Assembly (NCBI GenBank): GCA_002269645.1
Contig: NIVC01001136.1
Coordinates: forward strand, 30,721 to 94,720
DNA: 64,000 nucleotides
Direction: 5' to 3'
Source of the DNA: Macrostomum lignano
Taxonomy: Eukaryota
In this document: positions 13,219-52,222 of the stretch, piece by piece
Numbering within the stretch: the stretch's first letter is position 1
Layout of the letters: every line of letters starts with the position of its first letter
Made by a program: the position numbers and the translations under genes
The notes under the pieces: generated by a model
Told to the model about the DNA's origin: nothing
Database searches by the model: none
Seen by the model: only the letters and a program-made list of their open reading frames with translations

Positions 13219-14210
13219 ATGGCATTGATTTTCCATTCACTAATTTTATTCTTCTGCTACAAAGCAGCGTCTGCTCAATACAGTTGGGCTGAGCAGAGGG
13301 ACGACCTGAGCGAGTACAAGCTTGAAACCTCGGTGGCTGGCGTGCGGAGCGGCTTGGACTGCGCGACTCTCGCTGGACCGCAGCATCAAGCGGTTGAGTT
13401 CACTGAGCTCGGTGGCATCTGTCGATTGTACAGCTGCCAGCTTGGAACGAGCGGATGCAGAAAGTGCCGCAATGCGAGAAACTCGACTCTGCCTCTGCTA
13501 CTGGTAGGTGCTCACCGTGCGATCCATTTTTATTCCAATGTCTGTTGCTATCGTGATGCATTATTAATGACCCTACGATTTGGCTAACCGTGATATTACA
13601 GGTGAGACAGCTGGACGAGCTCGGACGAACCTGCTGGCGCACCTTCCAGCACCGAGTGGACGGCTCGGTAGATTTCTACCGGAACTGGACAGACTACTTG
13701 ACTGAGTTCGGACAGGGCGAGGACAGAAACTACTGGATGGGTCTGGAGGCGATCCACCAGCTCACTCGAGCCGGAGACAGGCGCGTGAGGTGGGAGATGA
13801 GCGACTGGAACGGCACTCGCTACTGGTGGGAGGACGCTCAATTCGCCGTGCAGAACGCCAGCCAGGGATACCGAGTCAGCGTCGGAGAGCCTGAAGTCAG
13901 CCGGTCGAATGTTGCAACTTGCAGTCATACCGTTGGTGCCTACATGAACAATGCGATGTTCAGCACACCGGATAAAGATCAAGACAGATGGTCCAGTAAC
14001 TGCGCAGTCACCTACCAAGGAGCCTGGTGGTACGGCAGTTGTCACTGCTTCAACCCGAACGGTCGGTACTTCACGCCTCCAGCAGCTTTTTACTTGTCTG
14101 AGCCGTTGTGGGCCGACGGACTTACATTCTCTTCCCCAGGCATTGGCTATCCACTGAACCACTACTACTCAATGAAGACTTTTGAATGCATGGTGGCTGC
14201 TTCTGTTTGA
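13219..14210 (+). CDS. Secreted fibrinogen-related protein A (signal peptide + PAN/apple-like + FReD), ~297 aa
   Basis: Exons 13219-13503 and 13602-14210, phase 0. Signal peptide MALIFHSLILFFCYKAASA. FReD motifs WRTFQHRVDGSVDFYRNW, FGQ..YWMGLEAIHQLT, FSTPDKDQD, CAVTYQGAWWYGSCHCFNPNG. Confidence 0.88.
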
Positions 14211-15329
14211 ACTATACTTTAGTGCCTACTATATGTCATGTATCCCCTTAAAAGTTTTGAGCGCTTCACAACAACCTTTTTTAAACTTAGTCGCGTAGCT
14301 GATATCTGCAGTGTCGTAAAAGATCTGTATGTCTACGTGTCCCAACGTCGGTAAACTTTCCCCGTGTATTTGGCACTAGTTCTTTCTTGCTTATTTAACT
14401 ATTCCGTGTACTAAAAACCTTTTCGAATGTTACGGTCTATAGCTAGAGAGGGATGGATCCATGTTGTATATGCTTCTAAAAATAATGCTCATTTGTGAGC
14501 AAAAAAGAAGAAAACAATGCAAAGTGTTTATTTTTTATCTGTAAACTCGAAGGCACATTTAGAGACGTGTACTGCTAAGCTTTTTTCGAGTCTTAAATAT
14601 ATATTGAAACTATCTAAAAAATGAAATCTATACTATTGCAGGTGTTCTTTGCTATTTTTCGTTTTTCGTAACGATTTTGTGGGACCATGCGTAAAATGCT
14701 TCAGCAAGTAGTGTGAGTAAATTAGCTGATTTTCTTCTAACATAAACGCGCTAGTGACTTGTCTAACGCGTATTTTTGTTCAAAGCCTTAACCAAAAGTC
14801 CCTTCAGAAAAGCATTTTTCATTACTTCTGTCTACGAAGCTGCTACGGCTTATTAATAAGTAATAATTCTGCCAAAACCATTCTCTATCGTTGCGTGTAG
14901 GAATAGAAGTTTCCACTCAAACAAAAGCCTAGCAGCTTCGTCGCAAGTGTAAACTGCGGGCGAAAATGCAATTTGTGAGTTGGGAACAAAATCTAGCTAT
15001 AGGGGATCTGCAAGACGCGGCGGCCCATGCAGCGTTTTAATTAGCTTTCTTCCCCAAAAACTGGTTGGAGAATTGCCAGCTGGGGCTGTTAAGTCTTCCC
15101 TCCACCAGCAGTCTTTCTAATGGGTTAGGCATCTACGCAGTGACAACAAAAACTGTTTTTTAGCAACGCAAGAGCTGGCTGTGGATAAAGGCGCATATTA
15201 AGAATGCGCATAAAGAATCTTCTTACTAAGCCCACTTGCAACAGCAGCTAACCAGACCACGTCTATTGAGCTACTCTCGTAAAAAGCCTAAATTGTGCAG
15301 GCACTCAATTTTCCTTTCGAAAACTCGCC

Positions 15330-16315
15330 ATGATCTACGCACTGCTCGTAGTGGCTATTTTTTTCTGCGGCGGTTTCTGCCAGGACCGATGGGCTGAGCA
15401 GAGAGACGACCTGAGCGAGTACAAGCTTGACAGCTCGGTGGCTGGTGTGCGGAGCGGCTTGGAGTGCGCGACTCTCGCTAGACCGCAGCACCAAGCGGTC
15501 GAGTTCACTGAGCTCGGCGGCATCTGTCGATTGTACAGCTGCCAGCTTGGAACAAGCGGATGCAGAAAGTGCCGCAATGCGAGAAACTCGACTCTGCCTC
15601 TGCTGCTGGTAGGTGCTCACCGTGTGATTCATTTTTATTCCAATGTCTGTTGCTATCGTTATGCATTATTAATGACCCTACGATTTGGCTAACCCTGATA
15701 TTACAGGTAAGACAGCTGCACGAGCTCGGACGAACCTGCTGGCGCACCTTCCAGCACCGAGTGGACGGCTCGGTAGATTTCTACCGGAACTGGACAGACT
15801 ACTTGACTGAGTTCGGACAGGGCGAGGACAGAAACTACTGGATGGGTCTGGAGGCGATCCACCAGCTCACTCGAGCCGGAGACAGGCGCGTGAGGTGGGA
15901 GATGAGCGACTGGAACGGCACTCGCTACTATCTGGAAGACACGCACTTCGCCATACAGGACGCCAGCCAGGGATACCGAGTCAGCGTCGGGGAGCAGGAT
16001 TTGAGTAAATCGAATGTCGTGGCCTGTAGCCATGGCAGCCCATACTTTTTAAATGGAAATATGTTTAGCACCATGGACAGAGATCAGGATGCGGGGACTC
16101 AAAACTGTGCTATCAGCTATCACGGAGGCTGGTGGTACGCTAGCTGTCACTGCTTCAATCCGAACGGAAAGTACTTTGAACCTCCGTTTGCTTTCAATCA
16201 GACGCAGCCTTTGGCTGGAGTTGGCATGTCATTTACTTCGCAAGATCCAGTTTACCCGTTCGTGCACTCCTATTCAATGAAGACGTATGAGTGCATGGTT
16301 GCAGGATCACTCTAA
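15330..16315 (+). CDS. Secreted fibrinogen-related protein B, ~295 aa
   Basis: Exons 15330-15608 and 15707-16315. Signal peptide MIYALLVVAIFFCGGFC. Same FReD motifs with a divergent C-terminal half (FSTMDRDQD..CAISYHGGWWYASCHCFNPNG). Confidence 0.88.
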
Positions 16316-17548
16316 ATTATGCCAATTAAGTGTCAGTGGCTTTATCACATCATTGACGAGACTCATTAATTACTAAATCCAAATTTAATTACATTCTTAA
16401 ATGAATACATAATGAAAATCTTAAGTGATGCGTGATTTGTTTAACTTTTTGCATCCTGGTAACTGATTAAACAATTCAATGCAGTTCGTAGATTATTTTT
16501 TGTATCAAATCCCGAATTCTGATCGAAAACAACTATTCTTTCAATAATTTCTATTTTTTGACAATGCACTGTGTTTCTTTTTTATAGATTTGCGGCTCTT
16601 GCACCTTTAAAATTTTTGTTTTTGCGGGAGTTATGTAGATGAATAAACATGAATTTTGAGCTATTTATGAAAGTAGCTCCCGAAAAGGCATGCTGAATAT
16701 CAGATAAAACGTAGACAGAAAGATTTTACCTGATATTATTAAATGTTACTAAAAAACATCCTGGAGAACGCAAATAATGCGTGGAAAGCCACTGTATCTA
16801 CAATTTAGCTTTCAGTTAAAATAGACGCAAACAAAGCTAGTATTTTTTACGGTAAAAACTCTAACAGTTCAATCTGCTTCGACTTTCTTATTCATCGAGA
16901 AAGTTTTAATCATATGCAGCATTGTTTGAATATGGGCTAGCATTTATGCTTGCACTGTCTCTAAGGCACTAACCATGAGCCGCTCTGCATCCTAATCCCG
17001 TGAGTAGCAGTCCTCAGCAGCATTAGAAGTACTCTAATTTGCGTCCCCTGCACAGTATCAGCAGTGTATCGCCTGACTCAGCCCTCAAATACGCCACTGG
17101 CACACCTGGCAACAGGTACTTTTCACATGTAAGGCTTCTCAGGCAGTTAACTCAATACATAAAATTCTCCGCAGTTACTGGGGGATGCGAGTCTTTGTGG
17201 GAAAATTACGAGCGTAATTGGAAGTTGGGAAGAAAATTGGTGTCGCGTTGCTAACAACAAAACTTGAGAATCATGTGACTAGCGCTAACCTCTCTACCCC
17301 GGCAGGGAGGCAGCAGTTTACAATAACAATGGAATTTTCTCTTCCAACCCCTAGACAGGAAAATTCTAGCCGAAGTCAGATAGAAATTGCCAATAAAAAC
17401 TCTTTCTCGCTTCTCAGTCTGAAAGCGATTTGAGAAAGAAACCATCCAGTTGATTCCAGCAAACAACTGCAACTAACTGTAAATTTTCAAAGCCGAGACA
17501 ACTGCAGAAAGTCAGCCCCTACTACTTGAGAAGCTCTACGAAACGAAG

Positions 17549-18519
17549 ATGAATGCTGAACTTCTTGTAGTAATCACTCTGCTGTGTAGAACTGCTTCGT
17601 CGCAGCTCAACTGGGCCGTGCAGAGAGACGACCTGAGCGAGTACAAGCTTGACAGCTCGGTGGCTGGCGTGCGGAGCGACTTGGAGTGCGCGACTCTCGC
17701 TAGACCGCAGCACCAAGCGATTAAGTTCGATCGCGAGCGGTACACTTGTCGATTGTACAGCTGCCAGCTTGGAACGAGCGGATGCAGAAAGTGCCGCAAT
17801 GCGAGAAACTCGACTCTGCCTCTGCTGCTGGTAGGTGCTCACCGTGCGATCCATTTTTATTCCAATGTCTGTTGCAATCGTTATGCATTTGGCTAACCGT
17901 GATATTACAGGTGAGACAGCTGGACGAGCTCGGACGAACCTGCTGGCGCACCTTCCAGCACCGAGTGGACGGCTCGGTAGATTTCTACCGGAACTGGACA
18001 AACTACTTGACTGAGTTCGGACAGGGCGAGGACAGAAACTACTGGATGGGTCTGGAAGCGATCCACCAGCTCACTCGAGCCGGAGACAGGCGCGTGAGGT
18101 GGGAGATGAGCGACTGGAACGGCACTCGCTACTGGTGGGAGGACGCTCACTTCGCCGTGCAGGACGCCAGTCAAGGATACCGAGTCAGCGTCGGAGAGCC
18201 TGAAGTCGGCCGGTCGAATGTTGCAACTTGCAGTCATACCGTTGGTGCCTACATGAACAATGCGATGTTCAGCACACCGGATAAGGATCAAGACACATGG
18301 TCCAGTAACTGCGCAGTCACCTACCAAGGAGCCTGGTGGTACGGCAGTTGTCACTGCTTCAACCCGAACGGTCGGTACTTCACGCCTCCAGCAGCTTTTT
18401 ACTTGTCTGAGCCGTTGTGGGCCGACGGACTTACGTTCTCTTCCCCAGGCATTGGCTATCCGCTGAGCCACTACTACTCAATGAAGACTTTTGAATGCAT
18501 GGTGGCTGCTTCTGTTTGA
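17549..18519 (+). CDS. Secreted fibrinogen-related protein C, ~296 aa
   Basis: Exons 17549-17830 and 17911-18519. Signal peptide MNAELLVVITLLCRTASS. Intact FReD motifs. Confidence 0.88.
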
Positions 18520-19370
18520 ACAACCCGCGAATTCGAATTGTATGCGGAAGAATAAGAAACTATTTTTAGACATACTTTTTATTAAATCTTGGTAAACCAA
18601 AAGTAACTATTAGGGATCTAGGATGCTACACTCGGTTCCGATAAAGTTTCTATAAAAGAGACACAATTCTTTAAGGAGCAGTTTTTGCCTTTTTCAGCAA
18701 TGACCGACTGCAGATTACGGGTTTGCGTTACTTTTGCGTTACTTTTGCGTCACTTTAACTCACTCTTCTTATACGGCAGAGAAACCTTAAGGATTTCAAT
18801 TTTTTACAGTTTACAGTTGAAGAAAAACATTGTCTGTTCATATCCTGCTGCAGCGACTGTGTTATAAGTGCAGGTAACAACGCAAGGTATTGCTTTTTCA
18901 TTTTCTTTTTTGAGAAGAAAAGTGTGTCTTTAAAATTAAAGAAAATTTTTTAAATTAAAGTGTCTTTAAAATGTTAAAATTAAAGTTAAATGTTAAAGTT
19001 AATGTTAAATGTTAAAATGTCTTTAAAATGTCTTTAAAATTAAAATTAGAATTTTTTAAATTTTTAAACACTTATTTGCCATTTACGTTTGTTTGTTGAC
19101 GAGCTATCTGTATCGTGCACTGCTAAATGTCGTGCAGTGCACGTGCTAAATCTCTAAACTAACTGCGCATATGTTGTAGACGCTTTATAGAACAGTTTGT
19201 GTTAAAAAGTGAAATAAAGAAAGGATAAAAGAAGCCTAAGTAAGTACTTAAAGCCTTTTCAATCAAGTATTTAACTTTTCTCAAAGCCAGAAATTAATAA
19301 AGAGTTCAAATTCCTTTTTTCAACTTTCGATTACCGTTTATTGGTCTGACCGAGGAAACTCTTCAACAAA

Positions 19371-22300
19371 ATGAACAATTCATTGTGGCAGTCAAATCTG
19401 GTGCCGCAAGCTCTGTGGAGCTCTCTACCGGGATCTCGTCAAGGCGCTGGAGCTTTCGCCAAGCACCAGCAAACTAATAATCAGTTTTCACCTGTCGACT
19501 ACGTGGTTCTGGGCGTCTTTCTGACCGCTTCACTGGCGGTCGGGATTGTAGCAAGCTTTATAGGACGGCGAAAAGGTACTGCAGCTGTGATGTAGATTGT
19601 ACATTTACGTATAGTCCGAAAGATGCAATTTATCGATCGGTAGTTTCCTTTATTTGTATCCTTGGTCGGTAGTTTCCTCTAATGATAGATTTCTCGTTCG
19701 GTAGTCTCTTCTTTTGGTAGATTTTTCAGTCGGTAGTTTCCTCTATTGGTAGTTTCCTCGATCGGTAGTTTCCTCGATCGGTAGTTTCCTCGATCGGTAG
19801 TTTCCTCGATCGGTAGTTTCCTCGATCGGTAGTTTCCTTGATCGGTAGTTTCCTCGATCGGTAGTTTCCTTGATCGGTAGTTTCCTCGATCGGTAGTTTC
19901 CTCGATCGGTAGTTTCCTCGATCGGTAGTTTCCTCGATCGGTAGTTTCCTCGATCGGTAGTTTCCTCGATCGGTAGTTTCCTCGATCGGTAGTTTCCTCG
20001 ATCGGTAGTTTCCTCGATCGGTAGTTTCCTCGATCGGTAGTTTCCTTGATCGGTAGTTTCCTCGATCGGTAGTTTACTCGGTCATTGGTTGTTACTATGC
20101 GCTTTTCGAGTTTTTTTGGGTTTTAAGTATTCGAAACTCACTACTAGCAAAAGTAGTAAAGATAAAAATCTTTTTAATTAGTATCTTCTGTTCTATTTAA
20201 TAACTAACTAATTAAAATAAAAACAAACGTGAATCGTTTTTGAGGCTTTAGTTTCTTCCCTTTTAATACAATGCGTCGAATAATAAGGCTAATGAAAAGG
20301 TAAAAAGAAAAGTAAAGAGATGGAAGAGAAGGTAGGAGAGAAGAGAGGAGAGCAGGGATAGGCGCCTATCCACATATACCATATGAACCTAATTTTAACC
20401 CTTAAATTTGTGACAAAGTTTAAAACGTGATAAGGCAGATTGCTAAGTAGATTACCCTACTTTTAGCTTTTACCCTACTAGTAGTAGTTAAGGGTGGGGA
20501 AATTTTAGCAGTGGATAGATAAGGAATTTGAAAGTTGCTATACAAGTATAGAGCAGTTGGGCTCTGGGTCTGTTTATTATGTAACATTCTTCAAAAAATT
20601 AAGTATTTCGGATCATTTTTCATTCTTTAATCTTACATAATGTGATTATAAGAACAGTAGGGAAACTGGTAGCAGAATGCAACTACCAAACTCAACTACC
20701 GTACCAACTAGTGATACCCTAAGTTCTCTTTAGTAAAAGCATCCTACTCGAGAATTCCAGGAAAATATCTTCGGCCAAAATGTCAGTAAAACCTACTACT
20801 TACTACTTACTTACTTACTACTTACTTACTTACTACTTACTTACTTACTACTTACTTACTTACTACTTACTTACTTACTACTTACTTACTTACTACTTAC
20901 TTACTTACTACTTATCTTTACACAGGCAACGCAGACGATGGCAGCGCCGGCTCGGACGAAAAAGAAGAATTCGTAATGGGCGGCCGCAAGCAGCAGGTGA
21001 TCCCAGTGGCCCTGTCACTGTTGGTGTCGTTCAACTCGGCCATACTAATCCTCGGGGGTCCAGCCGAGATCTACTTCAATGGCACAATGTACGTGCTGTC
21101 AATATTTGGCGAGCAGATCGGTTGCGTTCTGGCGGCTCTGATATTCGTGCCGGTGTTTTATCAGCTGCGACTGACGAGCTCGTTCGAGGTGAGAACCTGT
21201 AGCGTTTGCCGATTGCGGTGCAACCACAATAAGTTATGGCTAAAAATTCATTTATTAAAGAGATCAAAAAATATATGGGAACTAGAGGATCTAACGTAGA
21301 CAGTTTTCCCAAACTGCAGAAAATATTATAAACTCGAGAAATATGAATTGCATTTTAAACCACTTGAATAAATCTTATTCTATGATCACATGAAGTTGAG
21401 TCTGTTTATTATTTTGTTATTCTTATCTCCTCTTTCAGAGCTAAAGACTCCAAAAAGTTCACAAAAGTTAGACCTTATAATATATTTAATTATAACATCA
21501 CAGGACTGTCGTAATGAGCTTTCTGTAGCTGACGTCACGGGACTGTCGTAAAGAGTTTTCTGTAGCTGACGTCACGGGACTGTCGTAAAGAGCTTTCTGT
21601 AGCTGACGTCACGGGACTGTCGTTAATAGTTTTCAGTAACTGTCGTCACGGGACTGTCGTAAAGAGCTTTCTGTAGCTTTCGTCACGGGACTGTCGTAAA
21701 GAGTTTTCAGTAGCTGACGTCACGGGACTGTCGTAAAGAGTTTTCTGTAGCTGACGTCACGGGACTGTCGTAAAGAGTTTTCTGTAGCTGACGTCACGGG
21801 ACTGTCGTTAATAGTTTTCAGTAACTGTCGTCACGGGACTGTCGTAAAGAGCTTTCTGTAGCTTTCGTCACGGGACTGTCGTAAAGAGTTTTCAGTAGCT
21901 GACGTCACGGGACTGTCGTAAAGAGTTTTCAGTAGCTGACGTCACGGGACTGTCGTAAAGAGTTTTCTGTAGCTGACGTCACGGGACTGTCGTAAAGAGT
22001 TTTCTGTAGCTGACGTCACGGGACTGTCGTAAAGAGTTTTCTGTAGCTGACGTCACGGGACTGTCGTTAATAGTTTTCAGTAACTGTCGTCACGGGACTG
22101 TCGTAAAGAGCTTTCTGTAGCTTTCGTCACGGGACTGTCGTAAAGAGTTTTCAGTAGCTGACGTCACGGGACTGTCGTAAAGAGTTTTCTGTAGCTGACG
22201 TCACGGGACTGTCGTTAATAGTTTTCAGTAACTGTCGTCACGGAACTGTCGTAAAGAGCTTTCTGTAGCTTTCGTCACGGGACTGTCGTAAAGAGTTTTC

Positions 22301-25300
22301 AGTAGCTGACGTCACGGGACTGTCGTAAAGAGTTTTCTGTAGCTGACGTCACGGGACTGTCGTAAAGAGTTTTCTGTAGCTGACGTCACGGGACTGTCGT
22401 TAAGAGTTTTTCTAGCCAAGAATTCATCAAGAATTCTCGTAATTTCATTGCAGTATCTCGAGCTGAGATTCAAGTCTCGTCTTGTTCGACTGATGGGAAA
22501 TTTCCTGTTTCTAATTAGTAACGTGAGTATATAGTGGCTTTTACTAAAACTTATAGGTGCCTGTGTTCTTAAACGTACACTTTATTACCTGATATAGATT
22601 TATCTGATTTGACAAAAACTTACAGGTGATCTACATGGGACTTGCATTGTACGCTCCAGCCACTGCCTTGCAGTATGGTAAGTCGCATTGTGAAATGCAG
22701 GCATCTGTTTAAGTCAATACAGGTGCTGCACTTGCAAATTAGGCAAAATTTCGCTGTAGGTCGTTTATCGTTGAAAAAATGCATTAGCTTGATAGCGGAG
22801 GGATTGATGGTTATTTCTCAGCCTAATGGAACTGAAGTCCTAATATCTCACCCTTTCGACTTTTTAACTGGCGTGTACACAGGAACTTTTATTTATTGTA
22901 GGGGGTAGCAATCATTAGGGGTGCCACTATTTGGTGCTTTGGTGGGCGCCCCTGTCTCTTGGTGGGCGCCCCTGTCTCTTGGTGGGCGCCCCTGTCTTTT
23001 GGGGGGCGCCCCTGTCTTTTGGAGGGCCACCACCCCCTGTCTCTTGGAGGGCGCCCCTGTCTTTCGGTTGGCGCCCCTGTCTCTTGGGCGCCCCTGTCTC
23101 TTGGAGGGCGCCCCTGTCTTTTGGAGGGCCACCCCCTGTCTCTTGGAGGGCGCCCCTGTCTCTCGGTTGGCGCCCCTGTCTCTCGGTTGGCGCCCCTGTC
23201 TCTCGGTTGGCGCCCTTGTCTCTCGGTTGGCGCCCCTGTCTCTCGGTTGGCGCCCCTGTCTCTCGGTTGGCGCCCCTGTCTCTCGGTTGGCGCCCCTGTC
23301 TCTCGTTTGGCGCCCCTGTCTCTTCGTTGGCGGCCATTCCCCTGTCTTCTATGTGTAGTAGCCTTATACTTTTGTTACCTTAATTGAAATATGGATATTG
23401 ACATTCATAATTTTGCAATCCGTTAAACACTTTTAGTTTCCAACGGTGCCATCCCTGTTGAAGCGTCAATCGCCGTGAGCGGTGTGATCTGCACTTTCTA
23501 CACAGCCTGGGTTAGTGACTACACGAGTAATTCTACATTTTTTATAAATAGCTGACGCAGACGAATCTTGCACTGTTTAAATAAGATTTAAAGAAGATTT
23601 AATAGACTCTTTGTTGTCATGCGATTCACAGCCATGAGGGGCAACCTCTCCCCCCACCGCAGAGAGTGTAAATATGTGTTGCACATTATCACTATTAGTA
23701 AATCCGCTATTCCAAAAAGTTCTAATATTCACTTTGTGTCGTTTCAATCAGGGCGGACTCAAGGCTGTGATCTGGACTGATGTTTTTCAATCGGTTGTGA
23801 TGACGGCAGGAATTTTGGCTATCATTATTCGGGTAAGTTAAAAGTTTACTTACCCGAAAGTCAAACAAAATGCTTGAACTTGATCTTGTATTATTACATA
23901 GTTTACAATTAATTTCTGTTGCAGGGACTCATTGACCTGGGTGGCATTGGAAATGTGTGGCAGATATCGTACAAATATGGTCGCATCGAGTTCGACAAGT
24001 GAGTTTCAATAATGTCCCTTTTAAACTTCAGTTGCGCTGACTACTGCCGCTAAAAGGGGTGTCGTTTTTGGCACGGCAGCAGGCACTCATTTTGGTGCCG
24101 CTGGCAGGGTAACAAGGTGGGTACGAGTAGGTGGGCAAAGCATAGGTATGTCCACCACACAGCTTTTACTGAACGGGGGGACATGTCCCCCTGTCCCCTC
24201 AGTGCCGACCTCCCCTGGTTACTAAGGCAATACAGGCAATTGCATGGAATGTGCTACACGTCGTTTTTGTAAGTATGTCGATGTCAAATCTTAAAAAGTT
24301 ACTTTTTACTGCGTATTGCATATGAGGGGAGAGGGGAGGGGAGATGAGGGGAGAAGAGAGGGGAGATGAGGGGAGAGGAGAGTGGAGAGTAGAGGAGAGA
24401 GGAGAGGAGAGATAAGAGGAGAGGGGATAGGAGAGAGGAGATGATTGGAGAGGAGAGGAGAGAGGGGAGATTAGGGCAGACGAGAGGAGAGGGGAGATGA
24501 TTGGAGAGGAGAGGAGAGGAGAGGAGAGGAGAGGAGAGGAGAGGAGAGGAGAGGAGAGGAGAGGAGAGGAGAGGAGAGGAGAGGAGAGGAGAGGAGAGGA
24601 GAGGAGAGGAGAGGAGAGGAGAGAGAGAGGAGAGGAGAGGAGAGGAGAGGAGAGGAGAGGAGAGGAGAGGAGAGGAGAGGAGAGGAGAGGAGAGGAGAGG
24701 AGAGGAGAGGAGAGGAGAGGAGAGGAGAGGAGAGGAGAGGAGAAGAGAAGAAAGGAGAGGAGAGGAGAGTAGAGGAGAGGAGAGGAGAGGAGAGGAGAGG
24801 AGAGGAGGAGAGGAGAGGAGAGGAGAGGAGAGGAGAGGAGAGGAGAGGAGAGGAGAGGAGAGGAGAGGAGAGGAGAGGAGAGGAGAGAGAGAGCTGAGAA
24901 GAGACTCAAACCCTGAGCAGGCCGCATTGCTATTGTGAAGTTTCAAAGGACTCGAGGGCCGGATAGAGAGGCATTGCGGGCCGCTTGTTCTATAGCGTAT
25001 GCGCATTCTGTTCATTATTTTTTAGCTTCAGCTTAGATCCCCGAGTTCGTCACACAGTCTGGGGTCTGGTGGTTAACGGCATCGCCTACTCCAGCACATT
25101 CGGCGTGTCTCAAGCCTCCGTGCAGCGGTACTGCTCAGTGAAAACTATGCGACAGGCTCAATTGTAAATGTGGCCATTTTTATGACTTATTCATTGTGTT
25201 GTGATTTGGGCCATAGACATGGGCTAGGCGTAGCGTTAAGGGCACAGCAGCCCAGCAGTAAACGCGTCTCTGACTGTCGCGCTATGACACCTAGCCCTAG

Positions 25301-28300
25301 CCCTGGTTGTGGTGCGATGCACAGCTCTGAGAGCCACCCCCAGGTCACAGTGAAGTGTACAGCCTGACGATTAGAAAGACTGGGCCGCTGTACATCAATT
25401 TCAGCTAATCATAGACCACTAGCAGTATACCAGGACGCTACACTCACAGATCGTGTACTTTTTAAAGGCCAATTTACGTCAAGAATACACTGCGGAAATA
25501 GGAAAAAAATAATCTGTGCTCTCGTATCATCTTCATCTTTTTGGCCCCAAAAAAGTTATACCATCTTTGATTATACTGCTAGTAGTGGTCCTTGAGCTAA
25601 ATTTGTAAACTTTACGTAAAGCTTATGCATAGGAGAAAAAAAGACTAGATTTAAGTACAAAATATAACAAAACTTACTTAAAATCCCTGTGCACAGGTCA
25701 GTCGTTCTGGCCTCTCTCGGTGCCATATTCTTCGTGGTGTCCTCGTGCCTGGCGGGTCTGATCATTTTCGCATATTACGCTAACGTCGCCTGCGACCCCA
25801 GCGCGGCTGGCTGGATCGAGGATTCGAACCAGGTCCAACAATGCTAGCTTTTTTACTATGAAAATAACTGCATGGCTTTAGTGTTCACAGGGGGCAAGTC
25901 GAGCAATTTACAGACACAGATCAACTATAGTGAACCAACAACAACATCGAACAGAACACACGTACTGTACAGGATTACTTGCTCCATTTGTCGTTGGGAA
26001 AATTTGGTGCTGTAAAGACTGAAAACGAAAAATCAGCACCTGAAGTGCATGCTGCAAAGTTCAGCAAAGTTTACAGTTGTTTGAAACCTTCAACTGCTTT
26101 GGGCGGCAACAGAAATATGGGATAGAAAAGTATACAACACATTAATAATGCTTGATAGGGGTAGCTTGCGGCCTTACTAAGCAGTAATCGAATGCAGTGA
26201 TAACTGAATGCGCTCAACCATTGCATCATATAGAATAGAAATGAAGATGTAGCAGTATGAAACTGGAGAAATTGTTGATTTTTGGACCAACCCTAGTGGC
26301 CACTTTCTTACTTTCATTACCACTAGACGGACCATTGTCACAAGATCCAGTTTAGACATCTACTGGTTGAATCTAAACAGCAGTTCACATGTGGGCTTTG
26401 GCCCCGAATCTTGAAATGAGTCGAGTTGTCCCATTTTTTATGATTTTTAGGCATGGTACATGTGCGGGGGGGCGTAGCCTTTTTTATGATTTTTAGGCAT
26501 GGTACATGTGCGGGGGGGCCGTAGCCTTTTTTATGATTTTTAGGCAAGGTACATGTGCGGGGGGCCGTAGCCTTTTTTATGATTTTTAGGCATGGTACAT
26601 GTGCGGGGGGGCTGTAGCCTTTTTTATGATTTTTAGGCAAGGTACATGTGCGCGGGGCCGTAGCCTTTTTTATGATTTTTAGGCAAGGTACATGTGCGGG
26701 GGGCCGTAGCCGTTTTATGATTTTTAGGCATGGTACATGTGCGGGGGGGCCGTAGCCGTTTTATGATTTTTAGGCATGGAACATGTGCGAGGGGGGCCGT
26801 AGCCTTTTTTATGATTTTTAGGCATGGAACATGTGCGGGGGGCCGTAGCCTTTTTTATGATTTTTAGGCAAGGTACATGTGCGGGGGCGTAGCCTTTTTT
26901 ATGATTTTTAGGCAAGGTACATGTGCGGGGGGCCGTAGCCTTTTTTATGATTTTTAGGCATGGTACATGTGCGGGGGGCCGTAGCCTTTTTTATGTGAGT
27001 GTGTGAGTGTGTGTATGCGTATGACTGCGTACGGATCCGCGCGCTTGTGTGCCTGCTCAGGGGAGTCGGCGGAATGGGTAGTAATGCCTCTCGCTGGTTG
27101 TGTGACAATGTCGCTTAAAGTGCGCCAGGGTGCACACAGCCCTGTCTTTAATACAAAAGCAACAATAAACTTCATAATATATACGAGCATATATGTATTT
27201 AGCATATTAACATGATCGCGTGTGTTTTTTCAGTACAGATCGTTCCATTCTATGTGATGGAAAACCTCAGCATACCAGTGGTTCCTGGCCTATTCATCGC
27301 TTCGCTATTCGCCGGAGCCCTGAGGTAAGGAAGGGTTCTTGTGTGAGCAGCTCTTGAAACTAAATGCTTTTTCTCCCTTTCAGTTTCACCCATTATACAT
27401 TAGGCATTGAATGCTGCTGATGCCATTGTGTTGCAGTTCGGTATCGTCATCCTTGAGCGCGCTGGCTGCCACAACATGGGAAGATTTTTTCAAGCCCTAC
27501 TGGTGCCTGAACGCTACCGAGGCTAAAGCTACGTGGATCAACCGCCTGTTTAGTAAGAGACTGCTGTGCCTACTGCTAGAGTTATGGGCTGTGTAAGAGT
27601 TTAATGCATGATTTGGCAGTTGCACGAAGAAGTACGAAAGCCACAGTGGGCCAGACGATGTTATTTATTTAATATTTAGTCGGCTACTGCATTGCGTGGG
27701 GTGGTGGTCGTAAATGTACACTTTGCTTACTACGAGTACAGATAAGGGGGCGAGAGTTAGAGAGAGAAAGCCGGCTGACGTACGGAGCCGGAAAAATGGG
27801 GTGGGCGCTCTATAGCAAATCAATGGCTCACATCTCTCCTCAACGCAGAAAAGAAAATCACTTTTGAAAACTCGATGCTTGCATTCGAAGCGCGGGGAGA
27901 CTCGAACGACATACCGATTGAAGGGGAAATAAAATATTGGTTGCCGCTGACCATTGAATAAAAAAAAACAACGGACGCAGCCGGAATAAAAGCATTTCGA
28001 GAAACGAAAAAAAACGCAAAAGGTTACAAAAGACATTTAACAGTTTCAAACATTTTTAAACAGTTGCGACGGATTTCAAGACTATCAAATCCCCCCCCCC
28101 CTCAATCAAGTGTAGACTTTGAATCCCTCCTTCGCCGCTCTCGGATGCGGAGTGTGGGCGATCGGCACGTTCTGCTCGACGTCGGCGGGGCCGGCAGCGT
28201 CGGGTGCCGCCGCCTGCGGCTCCACCAGGTCGGGCTCCGGTGGCAGCGCCTTCAGGGCCGTGCAGTGTCGCCGACAAGTGGCCTGACCGCGCCGTAGCTG

Positions 28301-31300
28301 CAGCGAGTTGCCTTGCACTTTGGTCACAGTCCAGGGCTCGCTCTCAAATGGGGTTTGGCCCTTCAGCGGGTTGACGCGTTTCCGCAGCACCTGGTCGCCG
28401 ACCGCGTAGTTGTGCTCTCTTGGTCTTCGAGCAGCGTCGGCGTGCCGCTTCATCGTCAGCTTCTGCTTGCGGTCGTGCTCCCGCAGCTCCTTGTCGTTGA
28501 TGCGCACCCGCGCTGGTGGCCGCCGGCCGGGGACGCCGTTGCCCAAAGCGCGGCCCATCAGCAGCTCCGCGGGTGCGCGTCCGGTTGTGGCGTGCGGCGC
28601 CGTCCGGTACGCCAGAATCCACTCGTCCAGAGCCTCGCGCCAGTCCCTGCTCTCCGCGATTGCAGCGCGGACGACCTTGTTGATCGATCTGTTCAGGCGC
28701 TCGGTCATGCCGTTGGCCGCAGGGTAGAGCGGAGTGATGGCCCGGTGTCGAATTCCGAAGCTCCTGAGGAAGTCCTTGAACTGCGCCGACGAGAATGGAG
28801 GCCCATTGTCCGTAACGAGCTCCTCTGGGATGCCGAACCTGCAGAATGATTCCCGCAGCTTCGGGATGACTGCCTCCGCTGTAGTAGACTGCATGACCTG
28901 CACCTCGGGATACCGGGAGTAGTGATCCACGCAGACGAGCAGCATCTTGTTCTGCACCGGACCGAGGAAGTCGGCGCCAATCGACAGCCAGGCGCCCTTG
29001 GGGATGCTGGACGACTGCAGTGGCGTCGCACTGACTGTCGGCTTATGTGATGTCATGATGCAGCTGCGGCAACTGCTGACGGCCTTGTCCGCATCTGCGC
29101 TCATCTTTGGCCACCAGACTTTGCTGCTCAGCCTGGCCAGTGTCTTCCGCAGTCCCAGGTGTCCGGCATGTGCGAGGCGCAACATTGTCTCCCGGAGGCT
29201 GCTTGGCACCACAATCCTGTCCCGCCGAAGCAGCACTCCGTCCTCCTCAGCAAGCTCGTCTCGTAGTGCATACAGTGACCTCAGCTCCGGGTGGCCGAGG
29301 TCCCACCTGGCTCCCTGGATGGCGGCGATTGCGGCTTTGATCAGCGGGTCAGCCTGCGAGTGCCGCCTGATGTCCTCTACCGTGAGCGCTCTCGGCACCG
29401 CGGCCTGCAGTACCGCGCCGATGCTGGCGGAGTTCTGCTGTGCATCTTTGTTGTGCCCGGATGTCGCTAGCGGTTGTCGGCTGAGGATGTCTGCCGCATT
29501 CTGGGGCCCTGGGCGATACACCACCTTGAAGTTCATGTGCTGAATCTGCAGAGCCATTCGCTCGACTCTAGGAGGCGGCCTCGACCCTGGCGCCAGCATG
29601 TTGACCAACGGCCTGTGGTCCGTGATCACATCGAATCGAGGTGCGTCGTGCAGGTAGTATTGGAATCGGAGACATCCGAATTTCACTGCCAGCGCCTCCT
29701 TTTCAGTCTGTGAGTATCTGGACTCTACATCGGAGAGCGACCGGCTGGCATAGGCCACTGGTCTTGAAGTGCCATCTTCTCGCCGCTGCGCCAAGATGGC
29801 TACGAGTCCCCTCGGACCGGCGTCGACTATGAGCTCGGTTCGCAGTCTCTGGTCGAAAAAGCTAAGGGCGCCGGCTTCCGTGATCTGCTGTTTCAGCTGC
29901 TTGAAAGCGGCGTCTTCAGCTTCGCTCCATCTCCAGACCGCGCCTTTCTTCGTCAGGCGCCGCAGTGGCTCAGCGATTTTTGACAGCTGCGATGTGAACA
30001 CAGCCAGGTAGTTGACAAGGCCTAGAAATGACCTCACCTGGCTGGTGGTCTCTGGAGCCTTGAATGCCTTGACTGTCTCGATCTTGTCTTCGGTGGGCTG
30101 CACTCCACTGGCTGAGAGCTGCATGCCCATGAATGTGATCTTGTCTCTGGCCAGCTTGCACTTTCCGGGATTGAGCGTGACGCCGTGCTGCTGGAGGCGG
30201 GCGAGGCATGCTGCCAGATTCCTGTTGTGCTCCTCCAAGGAGTTCCCGAAAACAACGATGTCGTCATGAATCCACTTGACCTTGTCGAGTCCAGCCAGGA
30301 TGCCTGACATGACGACTTGGAGGATTTCCTGAGCCGTGGAGAGGCCCATGCACAACCGCTTGAGCCGTCGCAGCCCCCGTGGTGTCGAGAAGGTCAGCAG
30401 GTTCCTGCAGCTTTCCGCCACAAGGATCTGGTAGAAAGCCTTGGCAACATCCAGCTCCGAGAAGACTTTGGCGCCTGCCATGCACCCAGTCACCTCCTCG
30501 AAAGTTGGGATTTGATGTCGCTCCCTGATGACAAACCTGTTGACATCTCGGAGGTCCTGGGTGATTCGAACTTCGCCGGTCTGCGCCTTTGGCACCACGA
30601 CCATCCGAGCCACCCAGGGTGCCGGCCCGTTGACAGGCTCGATGATGTCTAGGTCCTCGAGCAGCTTGAGCTCCTTGTCGACCGCTGCGGCCAGGTGGAC
30701 AGGAACCCTTGAGGGCGCGTGGCAGACCGGCCTGGCGTCCTCCGTCAGGTGGATCGTTGCCGTGTAGTTCTTGACGCATCCGATGCCGCTGAACACCTGA
30801 GCGTGCTTGGTGAGGATGTGTCTCAGCTGCAGTTGCTTAGGGAGGTCTTCGTCCGCTAGTCGATTTCCTTTGAGCAGTTGGTCGATGAGGCCCTCTGATC
30901 GGTGGACGGCGAGAACCTCGGGTGTCGGCTGACTGCTGGGCGGGCCGATACGGAGGATCTCCATTTCGATTGCAGATTTTCTGCCGAGGACCGTCGCGCC
31001 CCTGCCGTCGAATATAAAAAAGGGCGCGTCTCTGGAGACACCAAAAACATTTACAGGCAGAGTCACCTTGCCGACCAGCTTCAGTGGGTGCGAGCTTCCG
31101 TAGGCAAACAGCTGGCTGCTGGCTGGCTGCAGTGGGGGTCGGTGTGGCAGGCCATTGAAACTGCTGACGTCCATGATGTTGCAACCGGCCCCGCTGTCGA
31201 TAATGATGTTCATGGAGGTGCCGCCGATTTGAGCGGTCACTCTCGCTGACGCCGGGTCACTGGCCACGTGGAAGATTCCCTCCTGGACTGGAGCTGAGTC

Positions 31301-35527: not shown

Positions 35528-36366
35528 ACCGAGGGTTATGATTCAAGAGAAACAAATGTCTAGAAAGTCTAAAAGACAATGCCATGAAAACTTATTCAAG
35601 GTTGACTTTAACTCTAAATAACTTTTTCAAATCCAAATTTATCCTCGATTTTTGATACCTTTCCTACACTCCATAATGGAGGCGATTAAAATTGGAGACC
35701 ATTGTCACCCAGGCTTGTTAATCTAGAAAGTCAAATAAATATTCACGCAGGGTGTACACCCTCATGACTGTGAATCGTTGGACAAACTCCAGAAATGGAA
35801 CCAGCAAGGGTTCTGGCTTGAGACGCGTTGACCACACGAGCCTAGTGGCTCCTAATCTCAATAAAATGATTAGCATTACAGAGAACTCAGTTTTCTTTCC
35901 TAGAAGTCAATTTACTTTGCATATTATACATCCTTCTCTCACAGTTATGTTAATAAACTGAAAAGTACACACGCCCCAGCGAGTTTAATAACGCACAGAT
36001 TTTTTAATATCGCAGCCGGCGAAGAAGCAATAAGATTCACGCATTGGAATGGGTTTCAGGATTCCGTGGCACTCTGGTACATGCAGTTCGGCTTCCTCTT
36101 AGCGGGAAACTCATGACATTATATGCTAAAGGTTTGATTGATCTGCATATGGGCTCCGCGTAGGCCTGCTGCGGCTTGTTTGACAGAACATCGCCTTTCT
36201 CAATTTCTCGATCCGTAAATCTCTCGAGCTTTTGGACTCAAACCGTCTTTCTCTGCACTGTTATTTGCTGATGGCTGTGAGAAATCAGAAAACTGTGAAA
36301 TCCTGCCGTTTATATTGAATTTTAGCATTGCACTGCTGCATATCCATAATTTTATTAAAAATATTG

Positions 36367-36801
<435 letters not shown>

Positions 36802-37223
36802 TAGCCGCAGCCAATCAAGCTGAATGCACGCACACAAGATCACCGGAAACGATTAAGGCAGCTGGAAAGCCAATGGGCGCGGTAAGCGCTTTTATCCAGA
36901 GGAACTACCTGCTGGAACCAGCCATGCCGAACGAAAATCAGACTACTCAAGTAGTGCAAAAGAGTGCAAGCAACTACCGAGAAATCTAATTTTCGTAACC
37001 GCTCCGGTGCAGGTCCTGGCAAAAGATGGTAGATAGCGAGAAAGAGCGATATTTTTTAAAATCTTCTTTTTTTATAGATTTGCGGCTCTTGCACCTTTAA
37101 AATTTTGAGAAAGAAACCATCCAGTTGATTCCAGCAAACAACTGCAACTAACTGTAAATTTTCAAAGCCGAGACAACTGCAGAAAGTCAGCCCCTACTAC
37201 TTGAGAAGCTCTACGAAACGAAG

Positions 37224-38194
37224 ATGAATGCTGAACTTCTTGTAGTAATCACTCTGCTGTGTAGAACTGCTTCGTCGCAGCTCAACTGGACCGTGCAGAG
37301 AGACGACCTGAGCGAGTACAAGCTTGACAGCTCGGTGGCTGGCGTGCGGAGCGACTTGGAGTGCGCGACTCTCGCTAGACCGCAGCACCAAGCGATTAAG
37401 TTCGATCGCGAGCGGTACACTTGTCGATTGTACAGCTGCCAGCTTGGAACGAGCGGATGCAGAAAGTGCCGCAATGCGAGAAACTCGACTCTGCCTCTGC
37501 TGCTGGTAGGTGCTCACCGTGCGATCCATTTTTATTCCAATGTCTGTTGCAATCGTTATGCATTTGGCTAACCGTGATATTACAGGTGAGACAGCTGGAC
37601 GAGCTCGGACGAACCTGCTGGCGCACCTTCCAGCACCGAGTGGACGGCTCGGTAGATTTCTACCGGAACTGGACAAACTACTTGACTGAGTTCGGACAGA
37701 GCGAGGACAGAAACTACTGGATGGGTCTGGAGGCGATCCACCAGCTCACTCGAGCCGGAGACAGGCGCGTGAGGTGGGAGATGAGCGACTGGAACGGCAC
37801 TCGCTACTGGTGGGAGGACGCTCACTTCGCCGTGCAGGACGCCAGTCAAGGATACCGAGTCAGCGTCGGAGAGCCTGATGTCAGCCGGTCGAATGTTGCA
37901 ACTTGCAGTCATACCGTTGGTGCCTACATGAACAATGCGATGTTCAGCACACCGGATAAGGATCAAGACACATGGTCCAGTAACTGCGCAGTCACCTACC
38001 AAGGAGCCTGGTGGTACGGCAGTTGTCACTGCTTCAACCCGAACGGTCGGTACTTCACGCCTCCAGCAGCTTTTTACTTGTCTGAGCCGTTGTGGGCCGA
38101 CGGACTTACGTTCTCTTCCCCAGGCATTGGCTATCCGCTGAGCCACTACTACTCAATGAAGACTTTTGAATGCATGGTGGCTGCTTCTGTTTGA
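37224..38194 (+). CDS. Secreted fibrinogen-related protein D, ~296 aa
   Basis: Exons 37224-37505 and 37586-38194. Near-identical to copy C, with a few substitutions such as FGQSED. Confidence 0.87.

Positions 38195-40834: not shown

Positions 40835-40866
<32 letters not shown>

Positions 40867-51791: not shown

Positions 51792-52222
<431 letters not shown>

What the first reader, a model, noticed from the sequence alone, without database searches (positions are those of the whole stretch)
13219..18519. Patchwork fibrinogen-related lectin family: homogenised middle, private signal peptides, variable ligand-binding end
Seen: A, B and C have unrelated signal peptides, then become near-identical from GACGACCTGAGCGAGTACAAGCTT through the intron (non-coding) and the first ~220 nt of exon 2. 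B then diverges sharply after ~15929/15990 across the C-terminal subdomain. In exon 1, B matches C at DSS..ECATLARPQHQ but matches A at AVEFTELGGIC. Known: the FReD P-subdomain carries the ligand/Ca site in ficolins and tachylectin-5, and snail FREPs diversify by gene conversion. Inference: ongoing segmental conversion is shuffling modules in an invertebrate immune or adhesive lectin cluster of a different architecture (no IgSF). This is the best candidate here for an undescribed system.
Basis: partly seen in the sequence, partly recalled or inferred. Interest (0 to 1): 0.72.

Follow-up and report, generated by a model that had tools for sequence, protein, structure and literature searches.

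The report
Flatworm lectin genes patched by conversion
Five neighbouring genes for secreted fibrinogen-type proteins in a Macrostomum flatworm are old copies whose middle parts have repeatedly been copied over one another, which is a clear but ordinary case of gene conversion, not a new kind of system.

Summary
The window, from the flatworm Macrostomum (M. lignano or a close relative), holds five two-exon genes for secreted fibrinogen-related-domain (FReD) proteins, not three: A, B and C in tandem, plus D and E, which are C-type copies in 16-19 kb tandem repeats.

A, B and C-type are old paralogs. Their flanks do not align, and synonymous sites are saturated in the signal peptides (pS about 0.84) and in B's C-terminal subdomain (pS 0.89). 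From about 66 nt after the ATG, through the intron and 223 nt into exon 2, they are 96-99% identical (pS 0.08; Fisher p = 3e-27).

Adjacent segments have different genealogies, including a 27-nt patch in which A = B but C/D/E differ at 16-17 sites. A separate C-D tract of at least 1 kb contradicts the tree of the repeat units, which a retroelement insertion fixes independently.

The best explanation is interlocus gene conversion confined to the gene interior (partial concerted evolution).

B's divergent end is ancient and under purifying selection; it is not diversifying fast. Other M. lignano FReD paralogs show the same constant middle and variable end.

Immune or adhesive function, ongoing activity and read support remain untested. 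This is a new member of a known kind.

The parts
13219..13503 (+). Gene A exon 1: private signal peptide (13219-13284), then a Cys-rich N-terminal segment (CRKCRNA motif).
   Evidence: Gene model. ATG start and GT donor at 13504. P0002 from M. lignano is 98% identical over this exon.
13504..13601 (+). Gene A intron (98 nt, GT..AG). It is non-coding yet homogenised.
   Evidence: Differences are A-B 4/98 and A-E 2/98, whereas the intergenic flanks do not align.
13602..14210 (+). Gene A exon 2: FReD B and P subdomains. The P subdomain is of the type shared with C, D and E.
   Evidence: Pfam PF00147 E = 9e-40. A-E 5/316 and A-C 6/316 in the last 316 nt.
13285..14212 (+). Extent of A's similarity to C, D and E. 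It lies entirely inside the gene, from 66 nt after the ATG to 2 nt past the stop codon.
   Evidence: Megablast gives 94.3-96.6% over 921-929 nt. No similarity on either side.
13393..13419 (+). 27-nt divergent patch in exon 1, A/B version (AVEFTELGGIC).
   Evidence: A-B 2/27 and A-C 16/27. It is neither an inversion nor a frameshift pair.
15330..15608 (+). Gene B exon 1: private signal peptide (15330-15389). It is C-like at 15431-15491 and A-like in the patch at 15498-15524.
15609..15706 (+). Gene B intron (98 nt).
15707..15929 (+). Gene B exon 2, homogenised first 223 nt.
   Evidence: A-B 2/223 and B-E 3/223.
15930..16315 (+). Gene B private 3' segment: a transition zone at 15930-15997, then an anciently diverged P subdomain up to the TAA stop.
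   Evidence: A-B 14/68, then 124/316. pS 0.89 and pN 0.27. It is 55% identical in protein to A's end and 33-43% identical over its longer local alignments to the other paralogs.
17549..18519 (+). Gene C: exon 1 17549-17830, 80-nt intron 17831-17910, exon 2 17911-18519. The C-type patch lies at 17720-17746.
   Evidence: An independent public model, P0112, carries the same protein and differs only at S280N over the part it includes.
17429..18520 (+). Tract in which C and D are nearly identical, against the tree of the repeat units (C side). The right edge lies between 18439 and 18646.
   Evidence: 12 sites of type E|CD against 4 of type D|CE inside the tract. Downstream there are 0 against 17 by my recount. 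Fisher p = 2e-6 was computed with 19 and was not rerun.
37224..38194 (+). Gene D: exon 1 37224-37505, 80-nt intron, exon 2 37586-38194. The D side of the C-D tract spans 37104 to about 38200.
53455..54443 (+). Gene E: exon 1 53455-53736, 98-nt intron 53737-53834, exon 2 53835-54443.
   Evidence: It keeps the full-length intron, as A and B do.
16574..64000 (.). Three tandem repeat units (about 16574-35401, 35402-50826 and 50827 to the window end). Each carries one C-type FReD gene plus a copy of an SLC5-like transporter gene.
   Evidence: Self-comparison (16574-26987 matches 52485-62866 at 98.9%). Transporter exons mapped.
27592..32344 (-). LTR retroelement that serves as a marker for the unit tree. 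It is present in unit 1, has a matching LTR and internal start in unit 3, and unit 2 has the empty site at about 47360-47367.
   Evidence: LTRs 99.6% identical. RT/RNase H/integrase domains. Target-site duplication GGCTG and the empty site.

Best explanation
The locus is a tandem cluster of old paralogous genes for small secreted fibrinogen-related-domain proteins in a Macrostomum flatworm. The interiors of these genes have been repeatedly overwritten by one another through non-reciprocal homologous recombination, that is, interlocus gene conversion or partial concerted evolution.

**Shown**
- The flanks, the signal-peptide codons and B's P-subdomain codons are as diverged as sequence can be.
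- The stretch between them, including the non-coding intron and the synonymous sites, is 96-99% identical.
- Neighbouring segments have different nearest relatives.
- One tract (C-D) contradicts a unit tree that is fixed by an independent retroelement insertion.

**Inferred**
- Conversion tracts can only start and end where two copies are still similar. The fast-evolving edges (signal peptide, untranslated regions) therefore dropped out of the exchange long ago and became 'private'.
- B's P subdomain either drifted beyond the similarity needed for exchange, or is kept distinct by selection because it has a different binding pocket.
- The result is a shared scaffold (a modified A subdomain plus the B subdomain) with at least two ligand-side variants and three independent promoter and signal-peptide contexts.

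**Protein function (inferred from homology only)**
- The proteins are probably secreted, Ca-dependent binders of ficolin-like fold.
- Their pocket departs from the canonical acetyl pocket.
For: **Identity of the genes**
- Pfam PF00147, 134-140 bits.
- Ficolin-1 is the best solved relative, E = 2e-30.
- The AlphaFold model has pLDDT 80-96 over most of residues 110-297. Foldseek finds L-ficolin with TM 0.77.
- The best hits are all M. lignano.

**Old edges, young middle**
- A-B pS is 0.84 in the signal peptide, 0.08 in codons 27-169 and 0.89 in codons 192-297.
- Fisher p = 3e-27 and 9e-9.
- The intron differs at 2-4 of 80-98 nt between lineages.
- The intergenic flanks give no match beyond one 25-nt hit.

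**Different genealogies in adjacent segments**

| Segment (A coordinates) | Pattern |
|---|---|
| 13285-13392 | B is near C/D/E (3-4/108); A stands apart (7-9/108) |
| 13393-13419 | A is near B (2/27); C/D/E stand apart (16-17/27) |
| 13420-13824 | all copies within 0.3-2.3% |
| 13893-14208 | A is near C/D/E (5-6/316); B stands apart (122-125/316) |

**The C-D tract**
- Site patterns switch from E|CD to D|CE near the stop codon (p = 2e-6).
- The units themselves are ((C,E),D), both by identity and by the retroelement, which units 1 and 3 share and which is absent from an intact empty site in unit 2.

**Recurrence elsewhere in the family**
- The P0006/P0008 genes on two contigs of GCA_002269645.1 have pS 0.11 in the middle against 0.71 at the 3' end. 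Similarity again starts just after the signal peptide.
- Twelve proteins of a second subfamily share a nearly invariant middle of about 150 aa, with variable N-terminal and P-subdomain ends.

**Other support**
- GC3 is 0.75 in the shared middle against 0.53-0.59 in the 3' part, as GC-biased conversion would give. This is weak evidence.
- Independent public models support the gene structures: P0002 (A exon 1 run into a B-position gene) and P0112 (a C-type gene).
Against:
- No other public record of B's P subdomain was found, so that segment rests on this assembly alone.
- With only three deep lineages and no outgroup inside the tracts, neither the direction nor the number of events can be fixed.
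- The five A-private sites in 13326-13386 could be ordinary A-lineage substitutions. Their clustering is only moderately significant: A-E for 13285-13392 against the rest gives p = 2e-4, and A against B within that segment gives p = 0.06.
- The 27-nt patch is unexplained in detail. It could be a segment that escaped conversion or a short import from an unseen donor.
- The GC3 difference could reflect amino-acid composition.
- Function is inferred from homology only. The pocket base residue is Leu in the A type and Gln in B, not Ala, so canonical acetyl binding is doubtful.
Confidence: 0.85

Rival explanations
1. Segment import instead of homogenisation. A, B and C-type are fairly recent copies. 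Their ends (signal-peptide region, B's P subdomain, the 27-nt patch) were replaced by pieces from more distant paralogs elsewhere in the genome, as cassette-like imports or illegitimate recombination.
For: - The 27-nt patch looks like a short replacement inside otherwise identical sequence.
- This position is variable across the family.
- A P-subdomain-only pseudogene fragment lies upstream of another family member (L001 8608-8871), so loose P-subdomain pieces do exist.
Against: - The replacements would have to extend through all the flanking DNA on both sides of all three lineages, since no flank similarity remains. One young interior is more economical than six old imports.
- B's end is closer to A's end (55%) than to the ends of the other available paralogs (33-43% over the longer alignments), so it is a cluster-internal old copy, not an import from another subfamily.
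- No donor for the patch or for B's end was found.
Confidence: 0.08
2. Assembly or polishing artefact. Paralogous reads were mixed during assembly or consensus polishing, which falsely homogenised the middles or created chimeric copies.
For: - Macrostomum genomes are highly repetitive and this window is full of tandem repeats.
- No reads were available.
- B's P subdomain has no second public record.
Against: - All five copies have intact reading frames and splice sites.
- The middles are not identical. They keep copy-specific differences (A-B 17 sites between 13285 and 13824).
- Independent public models reproduce the A exon 1, the A-B adjacency and a complete C-type protein.
- The same pattern occurs in a different, published assembly at two other loci.
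Confidence: 0.04
3. Recent tandem duplication followed by very fast adaptive divergence of the signal peptide and of B's ligand-binding end, with no conversion.
Against: - Synonymous sites in those parts are saturated (pS 0.84-0.89), while pN is only 0.27-0.41.
- Recent duplicates would retain alignable flanks, and these do not.
Confidence: 0.01
4. A dedicated diversification system. The constant middle serves as a homology anchor that lets P-subdomain and N-terminal variants be reshuffled at high rate, in the germline or somatically, to build a lectin repertoire as proposed for snail FREPs.
For: - The boundary between constant and variable parts falls within about 15 codons of the same structural position in three paralog groups.
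- Public records show further mosaic variants.
- Snail FREP variants are reported to arise by gene conversion and point mutation (PMC7588048).
Against: - Only two end types occur among the five copies here.
- The divergence is ancient and under purifying selection.
- There is no evidence of elevated rate, somatic change or immune expression.
- The recurrent boundary is also expected passively, because the P subdomain is the least constrained part.
Confidence: 0.05

Closest known systems
Biomphalaria glabrata FREPs (fibrinogen-related proteins)
   Same: Both are invertebrate multigene families with a C-terminal FReD. Variant forms in the snail are attributed to gene conversion plus point mutation (PMC7588048).
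   Different: - FREPs carry one or two N-terminal IgSF domains. These genes have none.
- FREP diversification is reported as somatic. Here only germline paralog mosaics are seen, and the divergent part is old and under purifying selection.
Sea urchin Sp185/333 (SpTransformer) gene clusters
   Same: Both consist of small two-exon secreted-protein genes, tightly clustered, embedded in segmental duplications and short tandem repeats, with mosaic sequences attributed to recombination or conversion (abstracts of PMC5103432 and PMC3091723).
   Different: - The protein family is unrelated.
- In Sp185/333 the mosaic is made of repeat elements inside exon 2.
- Here the mosaic is a homogenised core with old edges, and the minisatellites lie in the introns of a neighbouring transporter gene.
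Ficolins, tachylectin-5A and FIBCD1 (acetyl-binding FReD lectins)
   Same: - Same fold (TM 0.77 to L-ficolin).
- Conserved Ca-site aspartates, conserved Cys-Cys bridge next to the pocket, and pocket Tyr and His equivalents.
   Different: - There is no collagen-like or transmembrane part.
- The N-terminal subdomain is a lineage-restricted Cys-rich variant.
- The pocket base Ala is Leu (A type) or Gln (B).
- B also replaces the conserved pocket Tyr with Asn.
Partial concerted evolution in tandem receptor families, e.g. MHC class I, KIR, red/green opsins, RHD/RHCE (from general knowledge, not tested here)
   Same: Paralogs are homogenised by interlocus conversion over part of their length. A ligand-contact part stays distinct, which gives sharp identity boundaries and segment-specific genealogies.
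   Different: The protein family and phylum differ. Here the private parts include the signal peptide, and selection on the distinct part has not been shown.

Membership tests
Fibrinogen-related domain proteins (Pfam PF00147) | Significant match to the Fibrinogen_C profile above the curated cut-off | tested here: met
   134.5-140.5 bits against a cut-off of 22 for A, B and C. The match covers profile positions 41-189 of 221.
Fibrinogen-related domain proteins (Pfam PF00147) | FReD three-dimensional fold | tested here: met
   The AlphaFold model has pLDDT 80-96 over most of residues 110-297, with the N-terminal 100 residues poorly modelled. Foldseek matches L- and M-ficolin at E = 4e-19 with target TM 0.76-0.77 over about 219 columns.
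Fibrinogen-related domain proteins (Pfam PF00147) | Ca-site aspartates and the disulfide linking the Ca site to the pocket (FIBCD1 Asp393/Asp395 and Cys401-Cys414) | tested here: met
   D221, D223, C229 and C242 in A are nearly invariant columns. They have the same 13-residue Cys spacing and are present in B as well. Reference residues come from PMC3908420.
Acetyl-binding FReD lectins (ficolin / TL5A / FIBCD1 S1 pocket) | Pocket residues equivalent to FIBCD1 Tyr405 and His415 | tested here: met
   Y233 and H243 in A, with the same residues in B.
Acetyl-binding FReD lectins (ficolin / TL5A / FIBCD1 S1 pocket) | Conserved pocket Tyr (FIBCD1 Tyr431) | tested here: inconclusive
   In A, C, D and E, Y259 aligns with the ficolin-1 Tyr. 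B has N257 at that column in the gap-free A/B alignment. B's last 40 residues do not align to any solved FReD on their own.
Acetyl-binding FReD lectins (ficolin / TL5A / FIBCD1 S1 pocket) | [quoted passage not shown] | tested here: not met
   Leu260 in the A type and Gln258 in B. The requirement is quoted from PMC3908420.
Acetyl-binding FReD lectins (ficolin / TL5A / FIBCD1 S1 pocket) | Measured carbohydrate or acetyl binding | not testable with these tools
   Needs recombinant protein and glycan arrays.
Ficolins | N-terminal collagen-like region | tested here: not met
   There is no collagen match in Pfam. The region ahead of the FReD match is a 75-aa Cys-rich segment.
Snail-type FREPs | One or two IgSF domains upstream of the FReD | tested here: not met
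   Only PF00147 is found.
Snail-type FREPs | Somatic diversification of germline source genes | not testable with these tools
   Needs amplicons from single animals or single cells.
Interlocus gene conversion / partial concerted evolution | An internal tract of near-identity, including synonymous sites, bounded by saturated divergence | tested here: met
   pS is 0.08 against 0.84-0.89, with p = 3e-27. Segment table.
Interlocus gene conversion / partial concerted evolution | Non-coding DNA inside the tract is homogenised while flanking non-coding DNA is not | tested here: met
   The intron differs at 2-4 of 80-98 positions. The flanks have no similarity.
Interlocus gene conversion / partial concerted evolution | Adjacent segments support incompatible genealogies | tested here: met
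   Segment patterns. The C-D tract against the unit tree ((C,E),D).
Interlocus gene conversion / partial concerted evolution | Non-reciprocal transfer seen directly (donor unchanged, new mosaics in pedigrees or reads) | not testable with these tools
   Needs reads, a population sample or a pedigree.

The most novel reading that the evidence does not exclude
Across the Macrostomum FReD family, a constant scaffold is actively kept uniform. It acts as a homology anchor that allows N-terminal and P-subdomain variants to be re-assorted at a high rate, possibly differing between individuals or somatically. That would be a flatworm counterpart of snail FREP diversification, in a FReD-only architecture and in a model animal in which genes can be manipulated.
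Probability: 0.07. Interest if true: 0.7.

Novelty: new member of a known kind. Interest (0 to 1): 0.33.

Why it matters
**What the locus offers**
- It is a clean, well-bounded example of partial concerted evolution. The locus gives tracts of three ages, sharp edges and an independent marker (a retroelement insertion) that fixes the duplication order.
- It could therefore serve as a teaching or benchmarking case for methods that detect conversion.

**What it shows about Macrostomum**
- Macrostomum has a lineage-restricted FReD family. The N-terminal module was found in only 9 of 1.84 billion representative proteins.
- Members of this family share a constant middle and differ at the ligand side.
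- If these proteins are recognition molecules, the two pocket variants (Tyr-Leu against Asn-Gln) would be the first place to look for different specificities.

**Practical point**
- Public gene models for this family are often fused or truncated (P0002, P0112, P0113). Family counts and expression estimates based on them will be unreliable.

Tried and rejected
1. **A-to-E conversion.** E shares the 98-nt intron and five further sites with A, against C and D. I rejected a separate A-to-E event.
   - The E|CD pattern also covers three sites upstream of any similarity to A.
   - The C-E difference in the gene (about 1.1%) equals that of the flanks.
   - A single C-D tract explains all of this.
2. 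**Sawyer-type run test.** A test on polymorphic sites only was uninformative for B. The signal lies in where the polymorphic sites are, not in their order. I replaced it with region-wise synonymous counts.
3. **The 27-nt patch.** I tested it as an inversion or as a pair of compensating frameshifts. It is neither.
4. **Independent records.** Exact look-up of A, B and C in the protein collection found none. A search with B found no other B-type end.
5. **Tandem paralogs elsewhere.** I looked at two other M. lignano loci. L001 and L002 hold one intact gene each, plus one decayed P-subdomain fragment in L001.
6. **Literature.** Searches for Macrostomum FReDs and for concerted evolution of FReD families gave nothing specific.
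7. I repeated it as a window reference.

Full report
**What is there**

The window is eukaryotic. All the best protein matches are from the free-living flatworm Macrostomum lignano. One public model (P0002) is 98% identical to gene A's first exon. The source is therefore M. lignano or a very close relative.

Translation searches find five copies of one gene type, all on the + strand. Each has two exons and one GT-AG intron.

| Gene | Exon 1 | Exon 2 | Intron |
|---|---|---|---|
| A | 13219-13503 | 13602-14210 | 98 nt |
| B | 15330-15608 | 15707-16315 | 98 nt |
| C | 17549-17830 | 17911-18519 | 80 nt |
| D | 37224-37505 | 37586-38194 | 80 nt |
| E | 53455-53736 | 53835-54443 | 98 nt |

- Each gene encodes 295-297 residues: a hydrophobic N-terminus that reads as a signal peptide (by eye), a Cys-rich stretch of about 75 residues with a CRKCRNA motif, and a fibrinogen-related domain.
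- Pfam PF00147 scores 134-140 bits against a cut-off of 22.
- Ficolin-1 is the closest solved relative, E = 2e-30.
- An AlphaFold model is confident over most of residues 110-297 and matches L-ficolin with TM 0.77 over the whole ficolin domain.
- The N-terminal 75-residue module was found in only 9 of 1.84 billion representative proteins. Those I read carry the same family signature.

**Layout of the locus**

- A, B and C lie 2.1-2.2 kb apart.
- C, D and E each sit in a tandem repeat unit of 16-19 kb (about 16574-35401, 35402-50826 and 50827 to the window end).
- Each unit also carries a copy of an SLC5-like transporter gene, whose introns are full of minisatellites.
- Units 1 and 3 are 98.9% identical over 10.4 kb. 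Unit 2 is 91-98% identical to them, depending on the segment.
- An LTR retroelement (27592-32344, target duplication GGCTG) lies in unit 1. Unit 3 has the matching LTR and the start of the internal part at 63504-64000. Unit 2 has the intact empty site.
- The units are therefore related as ((C,E),D).

**Check of the observation**

The table gives differences per aligned position.

| Segment | A-B | A-E | B-E |
|---|---|---|---|
| Signal-peptide segment | 38/58 | 33/61 | 29/60 |
| A 13285-13392 | 7/108 | 8/108 | 3/108 |
| 27-nt patch (A 13393-13419) | 2/27 | 16/27 | 17/27 |
| Rest of exon 1 | 2/84 | 0/84 | 2/84 |
| Intron | 4/98 | 2/98 | 4/98 |
| First 223 nt of exon 2 | 2/223 | 1/223 | 3/223 |
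| B 15930-15997 | 14/68 | 4/68 | 14/68 |
| Rest of exon 2 | 124/316 | 5/316 | 122/316 |

- The flanks on both sides are at random-match level. A sensitive search between the intergenic regions finds only one 25-nt marginal hit.

**Is it more than constraint or chance?**

Varying protein constraint cannot explain the pattern, because it holds at silent sites.

- Between A and B, the proportion of synonymous differences is 0.84 in the signal-peptide codons, 0.08 in codons 27-169 and 0.89 in codons 192-297.
- Fisher p is 3e-27 for middle against 3' end and 9e-9 for middle against signal peptide.
- The intron, which is non-coding, is as similar as the exons around it.
- The middle is therefore young and the edges are old.
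- In B's private end, pN is 0.27 with pS saturated. That segment has been under purifying selection on average for a long time and is not a product of recent fast diversification.
- B's end is still closer to the A/C type end (55% protein identity) than to the ends of the other available family members, at 33-43% over the longer local alignments. It is an old member of this cluster, not an import from another subfamily.

**Several exchanges, not one**

Adjacent segments have different nearest relatives.

- In A 13285-13392, B goes with C/D/E and A stands apart.
- In the 27-nt patch, A goes with B and C/D/E stand far apart.
- From there to A 13824, all copies are within 0.3-2.3%.
- In the last 316 nt, A goes with C/D/E and B is saturated.
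- The patch is neither an inversion nor a frameshift pair. It lies at a position that varies across the family.

A separate and very clear event involves C and D.

- From 17442 to 18439 (C coordinates), 12 of 17 variable positions group C with D against E. From 18646 onward all of them (17 events) group C with E against D. Fisher p = 2e-6 was computed with 19 events and not rerun after the recount.
- The units are ((C,E),D), so the C-D near-identity over the gene (5 differences in about 1.09 kb) is a conversion tract of at least 1 kb.
- Its left edge coincides with the start of C-D homology at 17429/37104. Its right edge lies just past the stop codon.
- I considered an A-to-E transfer to explain why E shares the 98-nt intron with A and B. 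It is not needed. The C-E difference inside the gene equals that of the flanks, and the pattern extends upstream of any similarity to A.

**Mechanism**

The most economical account is interlocus gene conversion limited to the interior of old paralogs.

- Conversion needs similarity at both ends of a tract.
- The least constrained edges (promoter, untranslated regions, signal peptide) would be converted least often. They would diverge and then be excluded for good, which gives sharp edges and 'private' signal peptides without any selection for privacy.
- B's P subdomain either drifted out of reach in the same way or is kept apart by selection.
- These steps are inferred. The age contrast, the segment-specific genealogies and the C-D tract are shown.
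- GC3 is higher in the shared middle (0.75) than in the 3' part (0.53-0.59), as GC-biased conversion would predict. This is weak evidence.

**Family-wide pattern**

The layout is not peculiar to this window.

- Two other M. lignano genes from the published assembly GCA_002269645.1 (P0006 and P0008, on different contigs, loci L001 and L002) have the same two-exon structure.
- Their DNA similarity starts about 20 nt after the ATG and fades in the P subdomain. pS is 0.11 in the middle against 0.71 at the 3' end.
- Twelve proteins of a second subfamily share a nearly invariant middle of about 150 residues. Their N-terminal 70 residues and their P subdomains vary. No DNA was available for these.
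- In all three groups the constant-to-variable switch falls within about 15 codons of the same place, just before the FST-D-x-D Ca loop.
It is equally expected if the P subdomain is simply the least constrained part.

**What the two end types might mean**

I used the FIBCD1 structure paper (PMC3908420) and the ficolin-1 alignment for the mapping.

- A and B both keep the Ca aspartates (D221, D223), the Cys229-Cys242 bridge and the pocket Tyr233 and His243.
- The conserved pocket Tyr-Ala pair is Tyr-Leu in A, C, D and E, and Asn-Gln in B.
- That paper states that only Ala leaves room for the acetyl methyl. Neither type is therefore a canonical acetyl binder, and the two types probably differ in specificity.
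- This is inference. B's last 40 residues do not align to any solved FReD on their own.

**Limits**

- No reads were available, so a chimeric assembly cannot be excluded directly.
- Several points argue against an artefact:
  - All five reading frames are intact.
  - Copy-specific differences persist inside the homogenised part.
  - Independent public models reproduce A's exon 1, the A-B adjacency (P0002) and a complete C-type protein that differs from C by S280N over the part the model includes (P0112).
  - The pattern repeats in another assembly.
- B's P subdomain has no second public record.
- Those public models show other mosaic states. In P0002 the B-position gene is A-like at the sites where B here is C-like. 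P0112 has the A-type Asn at residue 280. This hints at recent or polymorphic exchange, but the copies may be different paralogs.

**Comparison with what is known, and verdict**

- The proteins are FReD family members. They are not ficolins (no collagen part), not snail-type FREPs (no IgSF) and not canonical acetyl-pocket lectins (pocket base not met).
- The evolutionary process is ordinary interlocus gene conversion, as known from many tandem families. It has been invoked for snail FREPs (PMC7588048) and for the sea urchin Sp185/333 clusters.
- I found no paper on Macrostomum FReDs or on concerted evolution of FReD-only families.
- The case is therefore new as an instance but not as a kind.
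- Immune or adhesive function and ongoing or somatic shuffling remain untested.

Noticed in passing
window 19350-25164, 33085-35503, 38871-50898, 55274-61066: Each C/D/E repeat unit also carries a copy of an SLC5-like sodium/solute symporter gene. Its exons lie on both sides of the FReD gene. A public model (P0112) fuses transporter exons with the C-type FReD gene.
   Followed up: partly
window 27592-32344 (also 63504-64000; empty site about 47360-47367): A Ty3/gypsy-like LTR retroelement with 241-bp LTRs that are 99.6% identical, one long gag-pol reading frame on the minus strand, and a 5-bp target duplication GGCTG. It is present in unit 1, unit 3 has a matching LTR and internal start, and it is absent from unit 2.
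   Followed up: partly
window 19633-20080, 21498-22410, 22939-23332, 26434-26995 and their counterparts in units 2 and 3: Minisatellite arrays with periods of 16, 37, 20 and 46 nt differ in copy number between units. For example, the 16-nt array has 28 copies in units 1 and 3 and 60 in unit 2. There are also long (GAGAG)n and (TAGA)n runs.
   Followed up: no
L001 8608-8871: A decayed fragment of a FReD gene that covers only the P-subdomain part. It has three in-frame stops, lies 1.1 kb upstream of the intact P0006 gene and is on the same strand.
   Followed up: no
L001 10001-11182 and L002 9824-12530: Two further family members, on different contigs of GCA_002269645.1, repeat the pattern of young middle and old ends. 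Their introns contain a shared tandem repeat of about 31 nt and differ greatly in length (342 against 1840 nt).
   Followed up: partly
window 10988-11524 (- strand): An open reading frame that encodes the C-terminal half of a protein kinase domain (PF00069, E = 6e-27). It is probably one exon of a neighbouring gene.
   Followed up: no
window 13854-13856 (gene A codon 180): A alone has Asn in QNASQ, which creates an extra N-glycosylation sequon. B, C, D and E have Asp at this position.
   Followed up: no
public proteins P0002, P0112, P0113, P0114: Public gene models for this family are often fusions of neighbouring genes or carry frameshifts. Family size and expression figures based on them are likely to be unreliable.
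   Followed up: partly
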